A stretch of DNA of 64,000 nucleotides from Podarcis vaucheri (taxonomy: Eukaryota): the NCBI GenBank assembly GCA_965113315.1, contig OZ220364.1, one strand, 5' to 3'. Positions 17,125 to 46,066 of this stretch are shown one piece after another. The notes beneath the pieces are model-generated. The model had not been told where the DNA came from. It did not search any database and saw only the letters and a program-made list of their open reading frames with translations. The first letter of the stretch is position 1; every line of letters starts with the position of its first letter. The translations under genes were made by a program, and so were the position numbers.

Positions 17125-18405
17125 TTTGATGTGTTTGACTTCAAATGATTATTTCCTTCTGTTCCTTTTGTCACCTTTGTTTACTAGCACCACTTTCATA
17201 TTGCTTACTCATTATTATTTTCACAAAACAACAAAATTAAATATTATTGTGATTCACAGTGATGTAAAAGAATCCTCACTTGTTCTCAAACACCTGCTGT
17301 AGTGGTGGGCAGTGATCTGAATACTTGTATTGCTTCATAGCTGACTTTATCATTTGACTCTAGGTAGCTTTAAAGTCTCCACGAACTTTACTAAACAGTA
17401 AATATGCATTTGAGTAATTGTTTTACAGCCATAGACTCATACATCATGTGTTTAATGGCACTAAGCAATTGGGCCCAGATAGTAAAATCTGCCTGCCTGT
17501 TTGTTTGTTTTTAGAATAGCAAGAGGCTGCAGGCTGCTCAGCCTGAATGTAAATCCAGCATTGCTAATGATCAATGGGAGTTGTAGTCCAAAAGATCTAG
17601 CAGCACCAAGCTGAGGAAGGCTAAGATAGGGTGACTTGCATTACGTAACACAGAAAACATATAAATTGGCTTGATGTGCAAAAACGAATCAAGACAGTAG
17701 AGATCTTGGTTATTTCTGCCAACTCCTGCTTTGCAGGCATGAAAATGAGTAGCAGCCTCTTCAACTTTGGTACTTTAGTCTGAGGTACTCACAGTTTGCC
17801 ACTTGGAAAGTGTAAAAAGTCTGTTATGAACAGAGTAGGTATTTTTTTAAAAAAGTAGCTCAAGCTGAGTGTCTTATGCTGATTTTCTGTGGAATGGCAT
17901 AAATTAATGTAAGAAAACAATAACCTTATTCTTAGTGGATGATTGCTAGAACAGAGCAGAGAACCAGATGCTGGTATCCAAATAAATAAACTATCCTACA
18001 AGTGTAAGACATGAAAACAGTGATTGTGATCCAGTCACAGTCCAAATTTAAGCACAACTTCCACTGATGTCAATGGGGACGTTAGGCTTGTGCTTAACAA
18101 TGCAATCCTAAATGAAACTATTCAGAATTAAGTTCCACTGAACTCAGTGGAAATTACTCTCAGGTAAGTGGGCATAGCGTTGCAACCTAGTCTCATGCAT
18201 TTCAGTAAGAAGGTGCTTAACTGCAGATGGACTGCCATGCACAGTGTTTCCAGGTCAGAGGGATGGAGACTGACAAAATAGTTCAAAGAGAAGAAAGGAA
18301 ATGCCCTATAGATCACCAAAGATATGAGGGCATAATAATATCGTAACTCTCCTTTCAATGACACTAGATTCAGGTAGGTAGCCGTGTTGGTCTGACACAG
18401 TCGAA

Positions 18406-18480
<75 letters not shown>
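18406..18480. repeat. Compound (TA)n(TG)n(TA)n microsatellite
   Basis: Seen directly; (TA)n continues at 19592-19613. Confidence 0.97.
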
Positions 18481-18484
<4 letters not shown>

Positions 18485-18529
18485 GGTTTTGGTGTCTTCG
18501 GGTGTCTTCCCGTGTAAGAGTCGGGGTGT

Positions 18530-18575
18530 CTGGGCGACGTTTCGACGAGGTCTCACTCGTCATCTTCAGGCTGGT
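18530..18575 (-). ncRNA. Minimal hammerhead ribozyme motif in the Penelope pLTR (inverted copy)
   Basis: Reverse complement of gcgacgtttcgacgaggtctcactcgtcatcttcaggc; same core as 19467-19512. Confidence 0.7.
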
Positions 18576-19466
18576 GCTTTCGGCTTCTTGTTACTGGAAC
18601 AGAGCAGAGTCTGGTGTTTGAGTTCCTATAAATACTGTTGAGGGGTGTGGTGTATAGCCTCCAACGTTCTGGGCAGAGAGGAAGTTCCTAGATTAGTGTG
18701 CCTTTTCTTCTTTTGTTCCTTAATTACTTGAGGGATATCTTGGGTGATTACATGAGTGATATTCTGAATACCACTGGGTGGGTCATTAAGTGTAGATTAG
18801 TTGCTAAAGCTTTCGTGTCTTGACCTCTTGAGCTTGTGAAGAGTTTTTCTGAGAAGATGGCTGTGCTGCATTTAGTTGTGCTCTGGCTTGGCTTCGTGTA
18901 TAGGGGCGAGCTGTGGTTTTGTGCCTTGTGCCAGCCAGATCTGTGTAGGGATTGCAGGGGGGTGCAGCATCCGGAGGTGCCACTATAGTTTGGCTACTGG
19001 ATGGAGTCTGTAATATGTCTGTGGAGAGGGTCTGGGTTTGGGTCTGGTGTGGTTGATTGGTGACGACGTTCTGTGTGCCTCTGGTTCTGGTGTCGGTTTT
19101 TGTGGGGAGGGCTAATTTCCAGATGTCTGGCAGGCGGGACGTGTCGTCACGCTTGTTCATGTTGTTCACAATGCAGCACAGCCATCTTCTCAGAAAAACT
19201 CTTCACAAGCTCAAGAGGTCAAGACACGAAAGCTTTAGCAACTAATCTACACTTAATGACCCACCCAGTGGTATTCAGAATATCACTCATGTAATCACCC
19301 AAGATATCCCTCAAGTAATTAAGGAACAAAAGAAGAAAAGGCACACTAATCTAGGAACTTCCTCTCTGCCCAGAACGTTGGAGGCTATACACCACACCCC
19401 TCAACAGTATTTATAGGAACTCAAACACCAGACTCTGCTCTGTTCCAGTAACAAGAAGCCGAAAGC

Positions 19467-19512
19467 ACCAGCCTGAAGATGACGAGTGAGACCTCGTCGA
19501 AACGTCGCACAG
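19467..19512 (+). ncRNA. Minimal hammerhead ribozyme motif in the Penelope pLTR
   Basis: GC-CUGAAGA-U-GACGAG-ugagac-CUCGUC-GAA-ACGU-C-GC: 6-bp stem II and palindromic ACGU stem III, but only 2 obvious bp in stem I. Confidence 0.7.
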
Positions 19513-22500
19513 ACACCCCGACTCTTACACGGGAAGACACCCGAAGACACCAAAACCTGCATTCCTGTACCCGTGAAAATCTACAAAAGCAAATATATAT
19601 ATATATATATATATTGTCCAGTAGCACCTTAGAGACCAACTAAGTTTGTTCTTGGTATAAGCTTTTGTGTGCATGCATAAGAAAAAACCTAGTTGGTCTC
19701 TAAGGTGCTACTGGACAATCTTTCAATGACAATTAGACATTTACAGAAACTTTTTCAGACTTTGTATCTTGTTGCTCTGTTGATGGAAGTCAAGCTGAAG
19801 AAAATAAAGATTAAGAAATATTTAACTCCAAAACCGAAGAAGTAATATAAAGGAAAAGGGAGAAAATGGAGCCTTTTTATTTTGTTAAAGCTTTCTCTTA
19901 TATGCAGCAAAATTGTACCAGGACTGCACCATATGAAACACATTATAAATGCTCTTGTAAAATCTACATCATTCTACCACATGAAAGGGCTGCTCCTAAA
20001 AATAGCCATTCAGAGAGTATGCAAGTTAGTTGTAATTTCAGCGATCATGAAATCTCTGTGTAGCCATTCACCAACCAAGAATTTTGCATGTTGAATATGC
20101 CTAGCAACAGCAGCCTTGCCAATTCTCCCTCCCCCATCATCCATCCCATAAAGACCCTGAGACACACTCCAGCATCCTTCCTCACTGCTGATTTTTATTT
20201 CCTGTACCTGACTGCATTGAATAGGGAAATGCCGATGCTGTTTGAAAACTCTGCCAACAGCATCACTGCCAACCACTTAAAAAGTACCATCATGTGTTCT
20301 TTTCCGTTGCATACTTGTTTTTCTTCATTCCTCAAATCAAAATATTTTCTTCTTAACGTTTTCTCCTTGAGCAGTTAATTAAATATTTCAGCTTTTACAT
20401 GGTGGTGAAAAATCTTTTTTGCATTCTTGCCCTTTAGAAGTGGCACCCAACAAATTTTCAGGAAGTGAAGGCCATACATAAGAGTGGAGGCAAAAGGCCA
20501 TTTTATCATGTGGAGGCTACTACTAGCAAATTCACTCTGGGCTTCATGCAGCCATGTAGAAGCCAGTAATTTAACATCTGGAGATGTGGTGAACTTTACC
20601 ACATTCCCATTACTCCCCATTTCTGATTGGCTTCCCCTTTCGCATGGTAACATTTCCCTTGCCATGTGGTTGGCTTCCACAGATGTCTTGCTCTCCACCT
20701 ACAATTACATAAATTCAGTGATCTTTAAATATTCTCCCAGCTACACTTATCTATCACTAGATCCCATTCAGCCAAGGGCTTCCTCTAAACGATCCAACCA
20801 CTTGAGTGGGGCCAAGGCAGCTCTGGAGTCAGGAGTGGGCTCCTTGTTGCAATGTGGGCATTGGTGGTTACCCTACAAATCACTTATGCTGGCCTTGATA
20901 ACGTTTTCAAAATAAACTTTTTATGAACTCTCAGAACGCCACAGGCATGCTGGACGAGGCATGTCCATGTATCACTTGGGATGTCAGAGACATTATCCCA
21001 TAGCTGACTGTGGAACTCATGCAGCCACACCCCGCATAGCACTTAATAGTTCAACTGATGCTGTCAAAATGTAACTTCCCTGCAACAGTAGTACTTATGT
21101 GAAGGAAGATGTCTTGTTTCCCCACAAATAATTGATGTCACACTCTGGGCCAGCCCGCCAGTTAGGCGAGATGTGGCAATTGCCTCAGGACAGCAGGCTC
21201 CGGACAGTAGGGGGGGGCAGCAACTCTGACTTCCAACGAGTTTTTTGCTGCCACCGCTGCACCACCTGCTGCCCACCCCCATGCACCAGTTGCTGTGCAC
21301 CTACCACACACCTGTCTCCTCCTCTGCTGTGTGCCTTCTGCCCCATGCCTGCCACTGCCCTCTCCTCTTCTGCCTCCTTTTACCTCCCAGGTGGGTGTGC
21401 AGTGGTAGAGGAAGAGATGGAGGGGTGGTGTTTTATGTTTTGCCTCTAGTGGCAAAATGTCCTGGGCCATCCCTGTGTAAACTGATCACTTGGGAAAGGC
21501 GTAACAGCCTATCGGCCGCACACAACCATGGTTCTTGATAGATGTCCTCTCACAAGGTCTTATATCCTTGAGGCATAATGGTGGGTGTTTCTGTGTTGTT
21601 GTTGTTTAAAAAAACAACCTTTGAAATTGCAAGTTCTGATTTAAGACAGAGAAATAGTTGGATCCCAAAAGAAAAACACAAAAGTAGAATAAAACATCCA
21701 TTTGCTTAAGTGAAAATACTTTTTGAAATGAATTTGTGTTTGGGACGATGGCACCTGAAAGGAAACTTGGCAGATACCTAATGAAATAATAGGATTCCCA
21801 GAGAAAGCTACATTGTATTTTAATAGCAGGCATAAATATCATTAACTCCAGTGTTTCGTTTCAATTCAGATGGAACTGCGGTGCAGAAGGTATTGGGGAA
21901 ATGTAGCATTAAGTGATTTCCTGTTGCTGTTTTTATCCCCTTTCCAAGTTAGTTTTTTCATTTAAATCTTTGTGGCATGTTAAGCTCCAGAGCTCTCTTC
22001 AAACTGTTCCATTGTACTAATATTTCAATCAAGCTGCTGAATTCGATTGCCATAAAATGACATCATAGAAATGTGCTCACTGTTGCTTTTTCATAAGCTC
22101 CTTAAGAGACTAGTGGAAAATCAAAGCATAAACATAATATACATTTAATATCTGTCGAGATCATTTATGCTTTAAATACAGCCAGCAGAGTTTCAAATGT
22201 ACATCCTTACCTGAGATTTGTAATTACTGATGTGACTGAATCTACAGACGCATTCAGATATGAGAGTAACTGGGGTGTCTAACCTACGAACCTCCCAATC
22301 TTGTTGGACTACAATTCCCATCAGCTTTGGTGATTAATAAAGTTGTAGTCAGGATCATCTGAAGAGCCACAGGTTAGCCAGTTGCAAAGGAATTCAGTGG
22401 ACGTTTCTTCTTTTGCTGTGCTTTTGGTCCTCTCTGTTTAGAGTGGCTAAGTGAAAAAGAGGACAGGGCTTCTGTACTTTGAGTAGTTGTGTACAAGCTA

Positions 22501-31741: not shown

Positions 31742-31888
31742 TTCAGCTCAGTCAGTAGAGCATGAGACTCCTAATCTCAGGGTTGTGAGTTCAAGTCCCA
31801 CATTGGGCAAAAATAAATAAATCATGCATTGCAGGGGATTGAACTAGATGAGCTCATGGTCCCTTCCAACTCCATGATTCTATGATTA
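31742..31888 (+). mobile_element. tRNA-Lys(CTT)-derived SINE with CR1 3' tail
   Basis: agctcagtcagtagagcatgagactcctaatctcagggttgtgagttcaagtcccacattgggc closely follows vertebrate tRNA-Lys(CTT); then gcattgcagggg...gtcccttccaactccatgattctatgatt. Confidence 0.85.
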
Positions 31889-37365: not shown

Positions 37366-40300
37366 TTAGTCGTTTAGTCGTGTCCGACTCTTCGTGACCC
37401 CATGGACCAGAGCACGCCAGGCACTTCTGTCCTCCACTGCCTCCCGCAGTTTGATCAAACTCATGCTAGTGGCTTCAAGAACACCATCCAACCATCTCAT
37501 TCTCTGTCGTCCCCTTCTCCTTGTGCCCTCCATCTTTCCCAACATCAGGGTCTTTTCCAGGGAGTCCTCTCTTCTCATGAGGTGGCCAAAGTATTGGAGC
37601 CTCAGCTTCACGATCTGTCCTTCCAGTGAGCACTCAGGGCTGATTTCCTTCAGAATGGAGAGGTTTGATCTTCTTGCAGTCCATGGGACTCTCAAGAGTC
37701 TCCTCCAGCACCATAATTCAAAAGCATCAATTCTTCGGCGATCAGCCTTCTTTATGGTCCAGCTCTCACTTCCATACATCACTACTGGGAAAACCATGGC
37801 TTTTACTATACGGACCTTTGTTGGCAAGGTGATGTCTCTGCTTTTTAAGATGTTGTCTAGGCTTGCCATCGCCTTTCTCCCAAGGAGCAGGCGTCTTTTA
37901 ATTTCGTGACTGCTGTCACCATCTGCACTGATCATGGAGCCCAAGAAAGTAAAATCTCTCACTGCCTCCATTTCTTCCCCATCTATTTGCCAGGAGGTGA
38001 TGGGCCCAGTGGCCATGATCTTCGTTTTTTTGATGTTGAGCTTCAGACCATATTTTGCGCTCTCCTCTTTCACCCTCATTAAAAGGTTCTTTAATTCCTC
38101 CTCACTTTCTGCCATCAAGGTTGTGTCATCTGCATATCTGAGGTTGTTGATATTTCTTCCGGCAATCTTAATTCCGGCTTGGGATTCATCCAGCCCAGCC
38201 TTTCGCATGATGAATTCTGCATATAAGTTAAATAAGCAGGGAGACAATATACAGCCTTGCCGTACTCCTTTCCCAATTTGGAACCAATCAGTTGTTCCAT
38301 ATCCAGTTCTAACTGTAGCTTCTTGTCCCACATAGAGATTTCGCAGGAGACAGATGAGGTGATCAGGCACTCCCATTTCTTTAAGAACTTGCCATAGTTT
38401 GCTGTGGTCAACACAGTCAAAGGCTTTTGCATAGTCAATGAAGCAGAAGTAGATGTCTTTCTGGAACTCTCTAGCTTTCTCCATAATCCAGCGCATGTTT
38501 GCAATTTGGTCTCTGGTTCCTCTGCCCCTTCTAAATCCAGCTTGCACTTCTGGGAGTTCTCGGTCCACATACTGCTTGAGCCTTCCTTGTAGAATTTTAA
38601 GCATAACCTTGCTAGCATGTGAAATGAGTGAAATTGTGCGGTAGTTGGAGCATTCTTTGGCACTGCCTTTCTTTGGGATTGGAATGTAGACTGATCTTCT
38701 CCAATCCTCTGGCCACTGCTGAGTTTTCCAAACTTGCTGGCATATTGAGTGTAGCACCTTAACAGCATCATCTTTTAAAATTTTAAACAGTTCAGCTGGA
38801 ATACCATCACTTCCACTGGCCTTGTTATTTGCAGTGCTTTCTAAGGCCCATTTGACTTCACTCTCCAGGATGTCTGGCTCAAGGTCAGCAACCACACTAC
38901 CTGGGGTGTACGAGACATCCATATCTTTCTGGTATAATTCCTCTGTGTATTCTTGCCACCTCTTCTTGATGTCTTCTGCTTCAGTTAGATCTTTACCACT
39001 TTTGTCCTTTATTATGGTAATCTTTGTACGAAATGTTCCTTTCATATTTCCGATTTTCTTGAACAGATCTCTGGTTCTTCCCATTCTGTTGCTTTCCTCT
39101 ATTTCTTTGCATTGCTCGTTTAAGAAGGCCTTCTTGTCTCTCCTTGCTGTTCTTTGGAAATCTGCATTCAATTTCCTGTATCTTTCACTATCTCCCTCGC
39201 ATTTTGCTTGCCTTCTCTCCCCCGCTATTTGTAAGGCCTCGTTGGACAGCCACTTTGCTTTCTTGCATTTCTTTTTCATTGGGATGGTTTTAGTTGCTGC
39301 CTCCTGTATAATGTTGCGAGCCTCCATCCATAGTTCTTCAGGCACTCTGTCCAGCAAATCTAAATCCTTAAACCTGTTCCTCACTTCCACTGTGTATTCA
39401 TAAGGGATTTGGTTTAGATTGTATCTTACCTGTCCAGTGGTTTTTCCTACTTTCTTCAGTTTAAGCTTGAATTTTGCTATAAGGAGCTGATGATCTGAGC
39501 CACAGTCAGCTCCAGGTCTTGTTTTTGCTGACTGTATAGAGCTTCTCCATCTTTGGCTGCAGAGAATATAATCAATCTGATTTCGATGTTGCCCATCTGG
39601 GGATGTCCATGTGTAGAGTCGTCTCTTGTGTTGTTGGAAAAGCGTGTTTGTGATGACCAGCTTGTTCTCTTGACAGAACTCTATTAGCCTTTGCCCTGCT
39701 TCGTTTTGATCTCCAAGGCCAAACTTGCCAGTTGTTCCTTTTATCTCTTGATTCCCTACTTTAGCATTCCAATCCCCTATAATGAGCAGAACATCCTTCT
39801 TTGGTGTCACTTCGATAAGGTTTTGTAAGTCTTCATAGAACTGGTCAATTTCAGTTTCTTCAGCACCAGTAGTTGGTGCATAAACTTGGATTACTGTGAT
39901 GTTAAAAGGTCTGCCTTGGATTCGTATCGAGATCATTCTATCATTTTTGAGACTGCATCCCAGTACAGCTTTCGCCACTCTTTTGTTGACTATGAGGGCC
40001 ACTCCATTTCTCTTACGGGTTTCTTGCCCACAGTAGTAGATATGGTAGTCATCCGAACTGAATTCGCCCATTCCCGTCCATTTTAGCTCACTGATGCCCA
40101 GGATGTCAATATTTATTCTTGCCATCTCATTTTTGACCACATCCAACTTACCCAGGTTCATGGTTCTTACATTCCAGGTTCCTATGCAATATTTTTCTTT
40201 ACAGCATTGGACTTTCCTTTCGCTTCCATGCATATCCACAACTGAGCGTCCTTTCGGCTTTGGCCCAGCCGCTTCATCAGCTCTGGATCTACTTGTACTT

Positions 40301-40467
40301 GTCCTCCGCTCTTCCCCAGTAGCATGTTGGACACCTTCCGACCTGAGGGGCTCATCTTCCAGTGTCATAACTTTTATATGCCTGTTGTCTTTGTCCATGG
40401 AGTTTTCTTGGCAGGGATACTGGAGTGGCTTGCCGATTCCTACTCCAGGTGGATCACGTTTGGTCAA
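37366..40467 (-). CDS. BovB ORF: AP endonuclease + reverse transcriptase (1033 codons from a TTG; first in-frame ATG at 40398)
   Basis: APE motifs IGTWNVRT, GISELKW, GDWNAKVG, NQIDYIL, GSDHQLL; RT motifs QAGFRRGR, FIDYAKAFD, GVRQGCILSP, LRYADD; BovB-type C-terminus WRALVHGVTKSRTRL; no stops or frameshifts. Confidence 0.95.
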   Translation of the reverse strand: MTKRDPPGVGIGKPLQYPCQENSMDKDNRHIKVMTLEDEPLRSEGVQHATGEERRTSTSRSRADEAAGPKPKGRSVVDMHGSERKVQCCKEKYCIGTWNVRTMNLGKLDVVKNEMARINIDILGISELKWTGMGEFSSDDYHIYYCGQETRKRNGVALIVNKRVAKAVLGCSLKNDRMISIRIQGRPFNITVIQVYAPTTGAEETEIDQFYEDLQNLIEVTPKKDVLLIIGDWNAKVGNQEIKGTTGKFGLGDQNEAGQRLIEFCQENKLVITNTLFQQHKRRLYTWTSPDGQHRNQIDYILCSQRWRSSIQSAKTRPGADCGSDHQLLIAKFKLKLKKVGKTTGQVRYNLNQIPYEYTVEVRNRFKDLDLLDRVPEELWMEARNIIQEAATKTIPMKKKCKKAKWLSNEALQIAGERRQAKCEGDSERYRKLNADFQRTARRDKKAFLNEQCKEIEESNRMGRTRDLFKKIGNMKGTFRTKITIIKDKSGKDLTEAEDIKKRWQEYTEELYQKDMDVSYTPGSVVADLEPDILESEVKWALESTANNKASGSDGIPAELFKILKDDAVKVLHSICQQVWKTQQWPEDWRRSVYIPIPKKGSAKECSNYRTISLISHASKVMLKILQGRLKQYVDRELPEVQAGFRRGRGTRDQIANMRWIMEKAREFQKDIYFCFIDYAKAFDCVDHSKLWQVLKEMGVPDHLICLLRNLYVGQEATVRTGYGTTDWFQIGKGVRQGCILSPCLFNLYAEFIMRKAGLDESQAGIKIAGRNINNLRYADDTTLMAESEEELKNLLMRVKEESAKYGLKLNIKKTKIMATGPITSWQIDGEEMEAVRDFTFLGSMISADGDSSHEIKRRLLLGRKAMASLDNILKSRDITLPTKVRIVKAMVFPVVMYGSESWTIKKADRRRIDAFELWCWRRLLRVPWTARRSNLSILKEISPECSLEGQIVKLRLQYFGHLMRREDSLEKTLMLGKMEGTRRRGRQRMRWLDGVLEATSMSLIKLREAVEDRSAWRALVHGVTKSRTRLND

Positions 40468-41942: not shown

Positions 41943-42089
41943 TATACACATAGATAGCTACATTGTGAGAAAGAAAGCTAAGCTAGAATGCTTCTATCTG
42001 AGGAAACTTTTTCTATGTGTGACGGCTTTTATTTCTAAATTAAAAAATTCCTTCCAGTAGCACCTTAAAGACCAACTAAGTTAGTTCTT

Positions 42090-42129
42090 GGTATGAGCTT
42101 TCGTGTGCATGCACACTTCTTCAGATACC
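42090..42129 (-). ncRNA. Minimal type I hammerhead ribozyme motif (fully paired copy)
   Basis: Reverse complement is GGUAUCUGAAGAAGUGUGCAUGCACACGAAAGCUCAUACC. Confidence 0.82.
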
Positions 42130-42149
42130 TGTGCATGCACACTTCTTCA

Positions 42150-42189
42150 GGTATCTGAAGAAATGTGCATGCACACGAAAGCTCATACC
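42150..42189 (+). ncRNA. Minimal type I hammerhead ribozyme motif
   Basis: GGUAU-CUGAAGA-A-(A/G)UGUGCAUGCACAC-GAA-AGCU-C-AUACC: 5-bp stem I, CUGANGA and GAAA cores, loopless palindromic stem III; predicted cut after C42184. Confidence 0.8.
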
Positions 42190-43564
42190 AAGAACTAACT
42201 TAGTTGGTCTTTAAGGTGCTACTGGAAGGAATTTTTTTATTTTGACTATGGCAGACCAACACGGCTACCTATCTGTGGCTTTTATTTCTGTACACAGAAG
42301 CATTCCTTCCTATGAGCCTCCACCTGCATTCTGAAGTGCTCCCCAGCTGGAGGCTTATCACCTTGTTGAGATCTAGCCCTGGGGGCAATTCAGGTGTTCT
42401 CCCTGAGAGCTTAAGCTTTGTGCAGTTTGATTCATTTTGTATTCTTGGAACTGTGAGGGTTCTGAATTCTGTTGAACCACATACATCGTTATGGTTAGGT
42501 CGTACCAGAGGCAAATGTTTGCCACAATGCATTGCAAACACTCACTTTGGTTTGTGGACACTTATAAATTACCTCAGATTGTCACAATACAGTGCCATAC
42601 TGTGAGGTTTTCTTCTAGATCACTACATCTATTTTTGGCACAGTAAAAAACCTTGACATTTGAATATCACTGGCTGAAAACACTGGCTTGCCCATATTCA
42701 GTATGCATCTTTCAGGTAAACAGTCATGTTCAGTCTTTGAAAAAAGGTTCTCTGGCTATCTGAACTAGAGACTTTTCCAGTTTGGAAATTCCCTGAGTCT
42801 TTCAGATACACCGCGAAACAGCGATTGCTCTCAAGCTTTTCTGTTTTGTTTTCTGTATTGTTGTCTGTCTGGGTCTTTCCACCACATAAGCATAATTAGC
42901 TCATGAGGATTCTCTGTCTGTGTTACAAGCTGCAAGTACAGACTAGGGGTGGAATCTGACTGGAGCCCCTGTGCCTACGGAGGCGTTTCTGATCTAGGGA
43001 ATCCCTCTATTAATAGGACGGGTAGGCAGTCCATTTTTGAAAATCTCCCCATGCAGCCTCTCACACCACCTTCCACCTAGTTCTGAAGACCCCCCCCCAA
43101 ACACTCTGGAGCTGATTTCGGAAGGGAACACTAATGGCTGTAGAAGGAAGAGGGAACTGTCTTCCCTCTGCTTCCATTAACAGAGGCATCCACTGAATAT
43201 AAAGTCCTTCTGTTAGCTCAAGGGCACCAACTCTTTTCACTATCTGCTCAAACTCTGCTGCCTGTCTTTTCCCTAGTCTGCTCCTGAGGTTCCTTGAGCC
43301 TCCCACACTCACCTTAATAGCTAACCTTGATACTTTCTAACCTTCTCTTTCTTCAGTTTCTGTGGACTGAGTTTCAACCATCACCTATATGTTGGACTAA
43401 GAGTTTCTCATTCTTAGAAGCATTGTGTTCATTTTATAATCCAGGCAAGGCTTACTCGTCTCACAGATCTGGCGAAGGCATATCTTTAGTTTGCTGTTCC
43501 TGGTCTGGCTGAAGTCATCAATACATCACAGCTTCCCAACAGTCAACAAGGTTGACTGGATACG

Positions 43565-45559: not shown

Positions 45560-46066
45560 GGTATCTGAAGAACTATGCATGCACATGAAAGCTTATACCC
45601 AGAACAAACTTAAAAGGTAAAGGTTAAGGACCCCTGACAGTTAAGTCCAGTCGCAAACGACTCTGGGTTGCGGCGCTCATCTCGCTTTACTGACCGAGGG
45701 AGAGGACGTTTTGTCCGCAAACAGTTTTTCCGGCCTGCATGACTAAACTGCTTCTGGCGAAACCAGAGCAGTGCATGGAAATGCCATTTACCTTCCCTCC
45801 GGAGCGGTACCTATTTATCTACTTGCACTTTGACGTGCTTTTGAACTGCTACGTTGGCAGAAGCTGGGACCAAGGAACGGGAGCTCGCCCCATCTCAGGG
45901 ATTCAAACCGCCGACCTTCCGATCGGCAAGCCCTGGCTCAGTGGTTTAGACCACAGTGCCGCCCACGTGCCTTAGAACAAACCTAGTTGGTCTCTAAGGT
46001 GCTACTGGACAATTTTTTTTTTATTTCGACTGTGTCAGACCAACACAGCTACCTACCTGAATCTAG
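45560..46066 (+). mobile_element. Copy of the short hammerhead/Penelope-like family, split by a Sauria SINE
   Basis: ggtatctgaagaactatgcatgcacatgaaagcttatacc (45560-45599, degenerate stem II); resumes at 45974 with ...gttggtctctaaggtgctactgga...gaccaacacagctacctacctgaatctag. Confidence 0.78.
45613..45973 (-). mobile_element. Sauria SINE, full length, inserted in the hammerhead element
   Basis: aaaggtaaagg tail; reverse complement similar to 30134-30494; TSD AGAACAAAC(T/C)TA at 45601-45612 and 45974-45985. Confidence 0.9.

What the first reader, a model, noticed from the sequence alone, without database searches (positions are those of the whole stretch)
42037..42276. ORF-less ~125-nt hammerhead-ribozyme retroelement family, inserted as fold-back hairpins
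Seen: three loci in 64 kb (18364/19612, 42037, 45560) share a unit made only of a 40-nt hammerhead (GGUAU CUGAAGA A GUGUGCAUGCACAC GAA AGCU C AUACC) and an ~85-nt tail ending ...gaccaacacggctacct. All three complete ribozyme copies begin at the same GGTAT (42129 minus, 42150 plus, 45560 plus). Two loci are head-to-head inversions bounded by 12-13-bp TSDs. Established: Penelope-like elements carry minimal type I hammerheads in their pseudo-LTRs and leave inverted, 5'-truncated copies. Inference: the fixed 5' boundary and high local density suggest a discrete non-autonomous 'mini-PLE' or retrozyme-like unit mobilised in trans, rather than random truncation. That would put a large number of candidate self-cleaving motifs in lizard introns.
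Basis: partly seen in the sequence, partly recalled or inferred. Interest (0 to 1): 0.82.

Follow-up and report, generated by a model that had tools for sequence, protein, structure and literature searches.

The report
Penelope retroelement end with hammerhead
The 240-base insert is a mirror-image insertion of the end piece of a very abundant lizard Penelope-like retrotransposon that carries a minimal hammerhead ribozyme motif: a real but already described kind of structure, not a separate 125-base element.

Summary
Window 42037-42276 is one insertion inside a perfect 13-bp target duplication. It has an inverted arm, a 20-nt filler and a direct arm, and each arm carries a 40-nt minimal type I hammerhead motif. 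Two more loci of the same family lie in the window, at 18364-19719 and 45560-46066.

The motif has the hallmarks published for Penelope-like element (PLE) minimal hammerheads. The layout of target duplication, 5' truncation and adjacent inverted copy is textbook PLE. The distance from the ribozyme core to the 3' end is 121 nt, which falls in the range I derive for the green-anole element PAc, 117-124 nt.

Public reads do not support a discrete unit starting at GGTAT:
- Transcribed copies continue upstream with a conserved 30 nt.
- DNA contigs share 14 of those nt.
- The 15 best-supported of 159 reported joints are all arm-to-arm joints with different end points.
- One core position, G12, is changed in 16-21% of the DNA depth.
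- No read ends pile up at the cleavage site.
- In the fold-back RNA the ribozyme cannot fold.

RNA reads show strand-specific A>G changes that fit A-to-I editing. Whether the family has its own coding partner stays open. Earlier notes of this scan describe an abundant Penelope-type hammerhead module elsewhere in this genome; I did not check that it is the same one.

The parts
42024..42036 (.). Left copy of the 13-bp target-site duplication GGCTTTTATTTCT
   Evidence: Read directly. Identical to 42277-42289 and directly abuts the insert.
42037..42129 (-). Inverted arm of locus 2, covering unit positions about 93-96 down to 1. Its outer end lies in the T-rich linker. It contains the best-preserved hammerhead copy.
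   Evidence: blastn: 96.9% identity over 96 nt to the direct arm. Read consensus agrees with this arm.
42090..42129 (-). Minimal type I hammerhead motif. Helix I is GGUAU/AUACC. Core box CUGAAGA. Extra A before helix II. Helix II is GUGUGCAUGCACAC, with G10.1-C11.1. Then GAAA, the palindrome AGCU as rudimentary helix III, and C17. The predicted cut lies between 42095 and 42094.
   Evidence: Exact pattern match. The only hit to my strict descriptor, against 0 in 200 simulated windows. The monomer MFE structure is the hammerhead fold at -11.8 kcal/mol. Its features match those listed in PMC4209133.
42130..42149 (-). 20-nt filler at the inversion junction, an exact second inverted copy of unit positions 7-26
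   Evidence: Read directly; 20/20 identity to the reverse complement of unit positions 7-26. Interpreted as a template jump (inference).
42150..42276 (+). Direct arm of locus 2. Hammerhead at 42150-42189, with the predicted cut between 42184 and 42185. Small stem-loop region, then T-rich linker at about 42231-42243. AC-rich 3' end GACCAACACGGCTACC at 42254-42269. The insert ends at 42276.
   Evidence: The 3' end lies 121 nt after core position C3 (42155). For PAc I derive 117-124 nt from the cDNA start sites and the consensus sequence.
42277..42289 (.). Right copy of the 13-bp target-site duplication
   Evidence: A contig of run X1 crosses the tail/flank junction (42253-42360) with 0 differences (table 8).
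18364..18408 (-). Locus 1, 3' tail of the same family (...GACCAACACGGCTACCTACCTGAATCTAG). It is separated from its body by a microsatellite and a nested element.
   Evidence: blastn: unit positions 89-126, 89.5% identity.
19617..19719 (-). Locus 1 body. The direct arm holds unit positions 17-77 (19677-19617) and the inverted arm unit positions 41-77 (19679-19715). The ribozyme is truncated. A 12-bp target duplication CTTTCAATGACA lies at 18352-18363 and 19720-19731.
   Evidence: Inverted repeat I2: 41 nt, 95% complementary.
45560..45612 (+). Locus 3, unit positions 1-53 with a decayed hammerhead (helix II and C11.1 changed, U17)
   Evidence: blastn: 88.7% identity. Fails my strict descriptor.
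45974..46066 (+). Locus 3, unit positions 42-126 plus the longer 3' end ...CCTGAATCTAG. It resumes after a SINE insertion (45613-45973) flanked by an 11/12 duplication of unit positions 42-53.

Best explanation
Each of the three loci is an ordinary insertion of the 3'-terminal module of a very abundant Penelope-like retroelement (PLE) family of this lizard lineage.

The module runs from a minimal type I hammerhead to an AC-rich site about 120 nt downstream. At that site the PLE reverse transcriptase starts cDNA synthesis on the element RNA, after its GIY-YIG endonuclease has cut an AT-rich target. The start site and the endonuclease step are inferred by analogy with the anole element PAc.

Reverse transcription towards the RNA 5' end often stops early. 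A second cDNA primed from the other target strand, or a template switch, adds an inverted 5'-truncated copy. The result is a fold-back inside one target-site duplication (inferred mechanism; the structure itself is shown).

The GGTAT start seen in this window is not the family's edge, because the family sequence goes on upstream.

The hammerhead is a relic of the element's own RNA biology. It is of the kind that needs two sense copies, or the element's protein, to cut. In fold-back copies it is locked in a hairpin of roughly 95 bp, which more probably serves as a substrate for A-to-I editing than as a ribozyme.
For: [quoted passage not shown] These are the features listed for PLE minimal hammerheads in PMC4209133.
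- **Insertion layout.** Exact 13- and 12-bp target duplications and adjacent inverted 5'-truncated copies. PMC8557442 describes this as typical of PLEs.
- **Spacing.** C3 to the insert end is 121 nt in locus 2, and the end is AC-rich (GACCAACAC). For PAc I derive 117-124 nt from C3 to the cDNA start, using the reported start sites at +111-118 of the ORF, in an AC-rich stem-loop, and the position of C3 in the consensus, where GACAACAC lies near that site.
- **Heterogeneous 3' ends.** Locus 2 differs from loci 1 and 3.
- **Family-wide data.** 11125 and 6872 contigs were laid. A conserved upstream extension ATAGAAGGATCTGGCAACTTCTGTTTCAGT precedes GGTAT, with 314+241 reads at one arm and 71+42 reads of the exact reverse complement at the other. 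The 15 joints shown, of 159 reported, have arm end points spread over the unit. Both RNA strands are covered about equally, which fits read-through transcription.
- **Folding.** The insertion RNA folds into one hairpin (-165 and -175 kcal/mol). The probability of the hammerhead helices is 0.
- **A second PLE.** A nested PAc-like PLE with the same overall layout lies inside locus 1.
Against: - No PLE reverse transcriptase or GIY-YIG ORF carrying this module is in the window, and none could be searched for elsewhere. Membership rests on motif, layout and spacing, not on a linked coding element.
- In the DNA contigs only the first 14 nt of the upstream extension are shared. Beyond that the consensus is AT-rich with agreement 0.4. 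That could mean many genomic copies do end near there.
- The segment between ribozyme and 3' end has a stop codon in locus 2 (TAA at unit positions 47-49), whereas in PAc this segment is the start of the ORF.
- Both arms of locus 2 end at unit position 1. Locus 3 ends within about 9 nt of it. A local hot spot is therefore not excluded.
- Rfam's hammerhead models give no hit even at E<=10.
- The read evidence comes from other individuals and partly from other species (organisms A and G).
Confidence: 0.78

Rival explanations
1. The module is a discrete, short, non-coding, non-autonomous PLE derivative (SINE-like, about 125-160 nt with its own 5' end). It is copied in trans by a PLE reverse transcriptase that recognises the region around the internal initiation site. 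This is the reader's 'mini-PLE', allowing that the true start lies a little upstream of GGTAT.
For: - Very high abundance.
- The DNA-contig consensus upstream of GGTAT holds for 14 nt only, then becomes AT-rich like target DNA.
- There is a stop codon in the ribozyme-to-tail segment of locus 2, and no PLE ORF in the window.
- Both arms of locus 2 end exactly at unit position 1.
- In vitro, PAc needs only RNA around the initiation site, not the full pLTR.
- Non-autonomous PLE derivatives are documented in other taxa.
Against: - Two thirds of the RNA reads that reach unit position 1 (314 of a depth of about 476) continue into one conserved sequence of at least 30 nt.
- The fold-back junction positions that were shown are scattered.
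- Locus 1 is truncated at positions 17 and 41, and locus 3 seems to extend upstream.
- In loci 1 and 3 the frame from the ATG in the helix II loop stays open to the 3' end. This is weak, since such a run of about 35 codons is expected by chance in 10-20% of cases.
Confidence: 0.17
2. It is a non-LTR retrozyme: tandem hammerhead units transcribed, self-cleaved and circularised into small circular RNAs that serve as retrotransposition templates.
For: It has a type I hammerhead with a palindromic rudimentary helix III of the kind that works in tandem dimers. Vertebrate retrozymes are related to PLE pLTRs.
Against: - No head-to-tail copies occur at any of the three loci.
- Among the RNA reads, the only joint in the 15 rows shown is a 4-read skip (42121>42174), and none of those 15 is a back-joint. 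No pile of read ends lies at the cut site.
- Retrozymes carry canonical hammerheads with loop-loop contacts, whereas this one is the minimal PLE type.
Confidence: 0.03
3. The fold-back is a host-used hairpin, such as a microRNA or siRNA precursor or a regulatory intronic ribozyme, and is kept by selection.
For: It is a near-perfect hairpin of about 95 bp with very low free energy. At relaxed thresholds it scores against hairpin microRNA models (MIR1222 69.5 bits, gathering score 90). RNA reads cover the family on both strands.
Against: - All Rfam hits are below gathering score and go to unrelated plant or animal hairpin models, which is a generic hairpin effect.
- The flanks of this locus have zero RNA depth in the two runs laid.
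- The structure is explained fully by the insertion mechanism.
- Thousands of copies have different junctions.
Confidence: 0.02

Closest known systems
Minimal hammerhead ribozymes (min-HHR) of Penelope-like elements (Cervera & de la Pena 2014, PMC4209133)
   Same: - Type I topology, CUGANGA/GAAA core, an extra unpaired base 5' of helix II, and G10.1-C11.1.
- Short helix I (5 bp) and long helix II.
- Helix III reduced to a 4-nt palindrome, which implies action as a dimer.
- Massive genomic copy number, mostly as single motifs.
- Pairs on opposite strands 100-700 bp apart are reported there too.
   Different: This helix II is a perfect 14-nt palindrome, so two RNAs can also pair through helix II (dimer -40.6 against 2 x -11.8 kcal/mol). 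That paper names turtle and snakes but not lizards. Cleavage of this variant has not been tested.
PAc / Poseidon_Ac of Anolis carolinensis (Frangieh et al. 2024, PMC11167929)
   Same: - A hammerhead lies about 120 nt upstream of the point where inserted copies end.
- The initiation region is AC-rich.
- Targets are AT-rich.
- Both target strands can prime cDNA.
- No RNA-seq read ends were found at the ribozyme cut.
   Different: - It is a different sequence family, with no alignable similarity beyond the core boxes and GAC(C)AACAC.
- In PAc the ORF starts inside the ribozyme and runs through this segment. Here the consensus has no ATG at that place, and locus 2 has a stop.
- The inverted arms here start in the T-rich linker, not at the initiation site.
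- A closer PAc relative does lie in the window, nested at 18441-19601.
Generic PLE insertion architecture (Craig et al. 2021, PMC8557442)
   Same: A high degree of 5' truncation, an inverted 5'-truncated copy immediately upstream, target duplications, heterogeneous ends or 'tail', and a microsatellite or AT-rich target preference.
   Different: These copies are extremely short (125-240 bp) and lack any pLTR-ORF body. The 3' ends of locus 2 and of loci 1 and 3 differ by about 6 nt, not by the 30-40-bp tail.
Metazoan non-LTR retrozymes (Cervera & de la Pena 2020, PMC7229834; Li et al. 2026, bioRxiv 10.64898/2026.07.22.740005)
   Same: Small, non-coding, hammerhead-bearing and PLE-related. Proposed to be mobilised by PLE enzymes.
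   Different: Retrozymes are head-to-tail tandem repeats with canonical hammerheads, expressed as circular RNAs. Here there are only single or inverted copies, a minimal hammerhead and no circular junction among the joints shown.

Membership tests
PLE-type minimal hammerhead (min-HHR) | Catalytic boxes C3-U4-G5-A6-N7-G8-A9 and G12-A13-A14, and H17 at the cleavage site | tested here: met
   CUGAAGA ... GAAA ... C17 at 42090-42129 (-). The direct-arm copy keeps the boxes but has G10.1>A.
PLE-type minimal hammerhead (min-HHR) | [quoted passage not shown] | tested here: met
   A13 bulge, G-C closing pair, AGCU, a 5-bp helix I, and a helix II of 5-7 bp from a 14-nt palindrome.
PLE-type minimal hammerhead (min-HHR) | Covariation or compensatory changes that preserve the helices across family members | tested here: inconclusive
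   Read summaries give only single-site frequencies. The frequent changes in the motif are CpG decay (C11.1>U at 13-17%, G12>A at 16-21%) and C17>U. No pairwise information was available.
PLE-type minimal hammerhead (min-HHR) | Self-cleavage, as a dimer or protein-assisted | not testable with these tools
   Indirect only. Table 6 lists no pile of RNA-seq read ends at 42184/85 or 42094/95; its single entry is at 42156. Random-fragment RNA-seq is a weak assay for this.
Rfam hammerhead families (searched against all 4227 Rfam families) | Score at or above gathering threshold against a hammerhead covariance model | tested here: not met
   No hammerhead hit at gathering score in the window, nor at E<=10 on 41950-42350 or 42145-42200. 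My reading, not tested, is that a motif without a helix III hairpin would fit those models poorly.
Penelope-like element insertion | Target-site duplication with an adjacent inverted 5'-truncated copy | tested here: met
   13-bp and 12-bp exact duplications. Inverted arms cover unit positions 1-96 and 41-77.
Penelope-like element insertion | 3' end at an internal AC-rich initiation site about 111-118 nt into the unit that follows the hammerhead (PAc) | tested here: met
   121 nt from C3 to the insert end, with GACCAACACGGCTACC at the end, against my PAc figure of 117-124 nt. This is a similarity of layout, not an alignment.
Penelope-like element insertion | Linked ORF with a telomerase-like RT and a GIY-YIG endonuclease in full-length copies of the same family | not tested
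Discrete non-autonomous short element (SINE-like 'mini-PLE') | A fixed 5' end shared by most copies, with unrelated flanks beyond it | tested here: not met
   A conserved extension of 30 nt in RNA and 14 nt in DNA contigs lies upstream of GGTAT. Fold-back junctions are scattered over unit positions 2-104.
Non-LTR retrozyme | Head-to-tail tandem units and circular RNA junctions | tested here: not met
   No direct tandem copies in the window. None of the 15 joints shown is a back-joint, and the only RNA joint among them has 4 reads.

The most novel reading that the evidence does not exclude
The hammerhead-to-initiation-site module is a natural minimal template. Any transcript whose 5' end or exon start lies at the module start would be enough for the PLE enzyme to make 'solo module' copies. 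The module start lies just after the splice-acceptor-like CTTCTGTTTCAG that precedes (T)GGTAT in the read consensus. The enzyme would copy such a transcript by internal initiation about 120 nt downstream. This would explain a real hot spot of 5' ends at or near GGTAT and part of the very high copy number. It would also link to the exon-trapping events that earlier notes report at the start of an abundant hammerhead module in this genome; I did not check that it is the same module.
Probability: 0.15. Interest if true: 0.55.

Novelty: new member of a known kind. Interest (0 to 1): 0.27.

Why it matters
As it stands this is an annotation point. Short hammerhead-bearing fold-backs in lizard introns are truncated Penelope-like insertions, and should not be counted as a new element class or as active intronic ribozymes.

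Two things give it modest value:
- A second, far more abundant family shows the same spacing of about 120 nt between hammerhead and insert end as PAc. That supports internal initiation of reverse transcription as a general PLE feature.
- These inserts create thousands of near-perfect RNA hairpins that appear to be A-to-I edited. That would make PLE fold-backs a major source of editing substrates, and possibly of double-stranded RNA load, in squamates.

Tried and rejected
- **Rfam** at gathering score and at E<=10 on the locus and on the single direct motif. There was no hammerhead hit; only generic hairpin microRNA and snoRNA models scored, all below threshold. I treat these as hairpin artefacts.
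- **Longer copy in the window.** I searched the window for the read-derived upstream extension and for the variant tail, to find a longer copy. None was found at up to 3 mismatches.
- **Upstream extension as an old inverted arm of the unit.** Rejected: the local alignment scores are no better than shuffles, with fractions 0.32 and 0.62.
- **Locus 2 filler as homologous to the upstream extension.** The gapped alignment is weak. The exact 20/20 match to the inverted unit positions 7-26 is the better reading.
- **Target duplication for locus 3.** Only 6-nt matches turned up, so it is unresolved.
- **Energy of the classical double-hammerhead dimer.** The structure is not nested, so ViennaRNA returned an invalid energy. 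I draw no conclusion from it.
- **ORF reading of the module.** The frame from the ATG in the helix II loop is open in loci 1 and 3 and closed in locus 2. It is too short to be significant.
- **Earlier findings.** Look-ups by sequence, by the combined words hammerhead/Penelope/GIY-YIG/reverse transcriptase, and by Neptune/hammerhead/tail gave nothing or only partial matches.
- **Autonomous partner.** A search was not possible. The contig collections are viral, metagenomic or prokaryotic, and the PAc protein is available only as printed text, which may not be typed into a search.
Full report
**1. What is in the sequence**

The stretch 42037-42276 is a single 240-bp insert bounded by a perfect 13-bp direct duplication, GGCTTTTATTTCT, at 42024-36 and 42277-89. 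It has three parts:
- an inverted arm at 42037-42129, which is unit positions about 96 down to 1;
- a 20-nt filler at 42130-42149, which is an exact second inverted copy of unit positions 7-26;
- a direct arm at 42150-42276.

The arms are 96.9% identical over 96 nt. The 40-nt hammerhead-like string occurs exactly at 42090-42129 (-) and with one mismatch at 42150-42189 (+). It gave no matches in 100 shuffles.

- Locus 1 (18364-19719, minus strand) has a 12-bp duplication, CTTTCAATGACA. Its direct arm starts at unit position 17 and its inverted arm covers unit positions 41-77. Its T-rich linker is now a (TA)n/(TG)n microsatellite into which another element has inserted.
- Locus 3 (45560-46066) is a direct copy split by a SINE at 45613-45973.

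The corrections are that locus 1 has no complete ribozyme, and that only the copy at 42090-42129 is intact by my strict descriptor.

**2. The ribozyme motif**

The motif reads GGUAU-CUGAAGA-A-GUGUGCAUGCACAC-GAAA-GCU-C/AUACC. It has:
- both catalytic boxes;
- an extra base between positions 9 and 10.1;
- a G10.1-C11.1 pair;
- a palindromic AGCU in place of helix III;
- C17;
- a 5-bp helix I.

These are the features Cervera and de la Pena list as recurrent in the minimal hammerheads of Penelope-like elements (PMC4209133). That paper also notes pairs of such motifs on opposite strands 100-700 bp apart, and attributes most single motifs to truncated PLEs.

My descriptor with these features finds one hit in the window and none in 200 simulated windows. 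The isolated 45-nt RNA folds into the hammerhead secondary structure as its minimum-energy state, at -11.8 kcal/mol. Rfam's covariance models do not detect it at any threshold tried. My reading, which I did not test, is that a motif without a helix III hairpin fits those models poorly. Even so, no curated model supports the call.

**3. Relation to the published anole element**

Frangieh et al. 2024 (PMC11167929) showed the following for PAc, a Poseidon-type PLE of Anolis carolinensis:
- The hammerhead sits at the pLTR-ORF junction.
- The enzyme starts cDNA synthesis internally, 111-118 nt into the ORF, in an AC-rich stem-loop.
- Genomic copies end at these sites.
- Both target strands are cut and extended.
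- The ribozyme cuts only with protein present.
- RNA-seq shows no ends at the cut.

In the PAc consensus I place core position C3 six nt before the ATG. The cDNA start then lies 117-124 nt after C3, near the sequence GACAACAC. In locus 2 the insert ends 121 nt after C3 (42155 to 42276), just after GACCAACACGGCTACC. That segment is the extreme 3' end of what a PLE enzyme copies.

The sequences themselves are not alignable, so this is a different family with the same layout. A true PAc relative is nested in locus 1 at 18441-19601:
- arms of 432 nt, 96% complementary;
- a hammerhead, CUGAAGA-U-GACGAG...CUCGUC-GAAA-CGUC, with the ATG inside it at 19479-81;
- a 32-nt extension present on one arm only (19561-19592), which is the published 'tail'.

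**4. Family-wide test of the fixed 5' boundary**

I laid two raw RNA-seq runs (X23 and X24, organism G) and Logan contigs of two low-coverage DNA runs (X1, organism A; X11, organism G) on 41960-42360 at 85% likeness. The results are as follows.

(a) The family is very abundant. 11125 and 6872 contigs were laid. The summed depth is in the millions on the unit against 20-56 on the flanks. The tool warns that summed depth is not a copy number.

(b) The family does not stop at GGTAT.
- At 42128, 314 and 241 RNA reads run on into ACTGAAACAGAAGTTGCCAGATCCTTCTAT, with agreement 0.79 and 0.72.
- At 42151, 71 and 42 reads carry its exact reverse complement before the direct arm.
- The family sequence is therefore ...ATAGAAGGATCTGGCAACTTCTGTTTCAGT-GGTAT...
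- DNA contigs (73 and 61) share the first 14 of these nt. After that their consensus is AT-rich, with agreement 0.4.

(c) 159 joints were reported. The 15 shown all connect the inverted arm to the direct arm at different positions. In unit coordinates the inverted arms end at 65, 54, 54, 44, 38, 37, 28, 13, 11, 9, 7, 5, 5, 5 and 2. The direct arms start at 47, 19, 63, 46, 20, 17, 16, 104, 15, 25, 22, 47, 56, 71 and 83. Fold-backs with arbitrary truncation points are thus a property of the family.

(d) Frequent variant sites are no rarer in the 40-nt motif than elsewhere.
- In the motif: positions 2, 27, 28 and 35. In the remaining 86 nt: about six sites.
- Positions 27-28 form a CpG. C11.1>U reaches 13-17% and the catalytic G12>A reaches 16-21% of DNA depth, which is ordinary decay.

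(e) Table 6 lists a single place where reads pile up (42156). Nothing is listed at the predicted cuts at 42184/85 or 42094/95.

Within the window the coincidence is also weaker than it looked. The two arms of locus 2 are not independent. Locus 1 is truncated at positions 17 and 41. Upstream of its GGTAT, locus 3 has TGTT--AGT against the family's TGTTTCAGT.

**5. How the fold-back arises and what it does**

What is shown: one target duplication encloses two opposed copies, both reaching unit position 1, plus a short repeated inverted piece.

What is inferred, in order:
1. cDNA is primed on the bottom strand at the AC-rich site and runs to the RNA 5' region.
2. A second cDNA is made in the opposite orientation. 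It starts in or next to the T-rich linker: the outer ends of the inverted arms lie at unit position about 96 in locus 2 and 77 in locus 1. It is primed from the other cut strand, or follows a template switch.
3. A jump back over the palindromic helix II produces the 20-nt filler.
4. The ends are then joined.

This matches the finding that PAc extends both strands and the general PLE architecture.

The consequences for the RNA are these. A transcript through locus 2 carries one sense ribozyme and its complement. It folds into one hairpin (-165 kcal/mol for the plus strand, -175 for the minus strand). The probability of arm-arm pairs is about 1, and that of the hammerhead helices is 0. Two free sense monomers would pair strongly, at -40.6 against -23.6 kcal/mol, through the palindromic helix II. 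Inverted copies do not supply two sense motifs. The claim that these loci add many candidate self-cleaving motifs to introns is therefore weak for fold-backs and for decayed single copies.

**6. RNA-only changes**

In both RNA runs many A positions between 42178 and 42214 read G in reads of one orientation only. Examples are 42202 with 129/326 and 161/264, and 42213 with 116/357 and 151/284. T positions (42186, 42196, 42200, 42201) read C mostly or only in the opposite orientation. The DNA contigs of organisms A and G show these changes at well under 1% of depth. By count of variant places, A>G is 10 and 13 in the RNA runs against 2 and 3 in the DNA runs.

This strand-consistent A>G pattern on a sequence that forms long double-stranded RNA is what A-to-I editing looks like. 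It is not proven, because no DNA of the same individuals was available.

**7. What remains open**

- Whether the family has a coding partner. The window has no PLE ORF. I could not search a lizard assembly or use the printed PAc protein as a query.
- Why DNA contigs agree for only 14 nt upstream while RNA reads agree for 30. Either many genomic copies end near -14, or several subfamilies differ upstream and one dominates the RNA.
- A variant in which the sequence after 42238 is replaced by TGTTTTATCCATTCCACTGTTACAGCACAT (76+64 reads, mirrored at 42042). It is unexplained.
- The upstream extension ends in CTTCTGTTTCAG, one nt before GGTAT, which looks like a 3' splice site. Earlier notes of this scan (s1-851430, s1-851426) say host exons are joined to the start, or to a splice acceptor, of an abundant Penelope-type module in this genome. 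I did not test this. If it is the same module, a real hot spot of RNA ends at this point could come from splicing rather than from an element boundary.

**8. Comparison and verdict**

The element works like, and by every testable criterion is, a PLE 3'-end insertion with a min-HHR. It is not a retrozyme:
- there are no tandem units;
- no circular junction is among the joints shown;
- the hammerhead is minimal rather than canonical.

The discrete 'mini-PLE' reading failed its defining test of a fixed 5' end, but it is not excluded in a looser form (about 0.17).

Idea and structure are already in the literature: PMC4209133, PMC8557442, PMC11167929, and for non-autonomous derivatives bioRxiv 10.64898/2026.07.22.740005. 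Earlier notes of this scan describe an abundant Penelope-type hammerhead module elsewhere in this genome (s1-853164, s1-849603), which I take to be the same one without having compared the sequences. I rate the finding a new member of a known kind, of low to moderate interest.

Noticed in passing
window 42178-42214 (family-wide reads laid on the direct arm): Strand-specific A>G changes (reads with first mate on -) and T>C changes (first mate on +) at about 15 positions in two RNA-seq runs, reaching up to about 60% of reads. They are essentially absent from the DNA contigs of two runs. The pattern fits A-to-I editing of the double-stranded RNA formed by Penelope fold-backs.
   Followed up: partly
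window 18441-19601: A second PLE, unrelated in sequence and similar to PAc/Poseidon, is nested in the (TA)n linker of locus 1. It has 432-nt arms that are 96% complementary. Its hammerhead, CUGAAGA-U-GACGAG..CUCGUC-GAAA-CGUC, has an ATG inside it (19479-19481) opening a frame that runs to the 3' end. A 32-nt 'tail' (19561-19592) is present on one arm only.
   Followed up: partly
window 45613-45973: A SINE inserted into locus 3 of the hammerhead family. It is flanked by an 11/12 duplication of unit positions 42-53 (45601-45612 and 45974-45985). Locus 3 therefore predates that SINE insertion.
   Followed up: partly
window 42128 / 42151 (loose ends of reads): The conserved sequence upstream of the module ends in CTTCTGTTTCAG, one nt before GGTAT, so it looks like a 3' splice site. 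Earlier notes of this scan report host exons joined to the start of an abundant hammerhead module elsewhere in the genome.
   Followed up: no
window 42238 and mirrored at 42042: 76+64 RNA reads replace the AC-rich tail after the T-run by TGTTTTATCCATTCCACTGTTACAGCACAT. This is either a subfamily or one highly expressed locus with a different 3' part. The sequence is not present in the window.
   Followed up: partly
window 42277-42360: A 1448-nt contig of run X11 (organism G) matches the right flank starting exactly at 42277, with 2 differences. It continues for 135 nt that do not lie on the insert. This may be an empty site, which would mean the insertion is absent in organism G. A contig of X1 (organism A) crosses the tail/flank junction with 0 differences.
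   Followed up: no
window 31745-31801: A partial tRNA match was the only Rfam hit at gathering score in the window (41 bits, model positions 9-63). It is probably the tRNA-derived head of a SINE.
   Followed up: no
window 37366-40467: A 1033-aa open reading frame on the minus strand.
   Followed up: no
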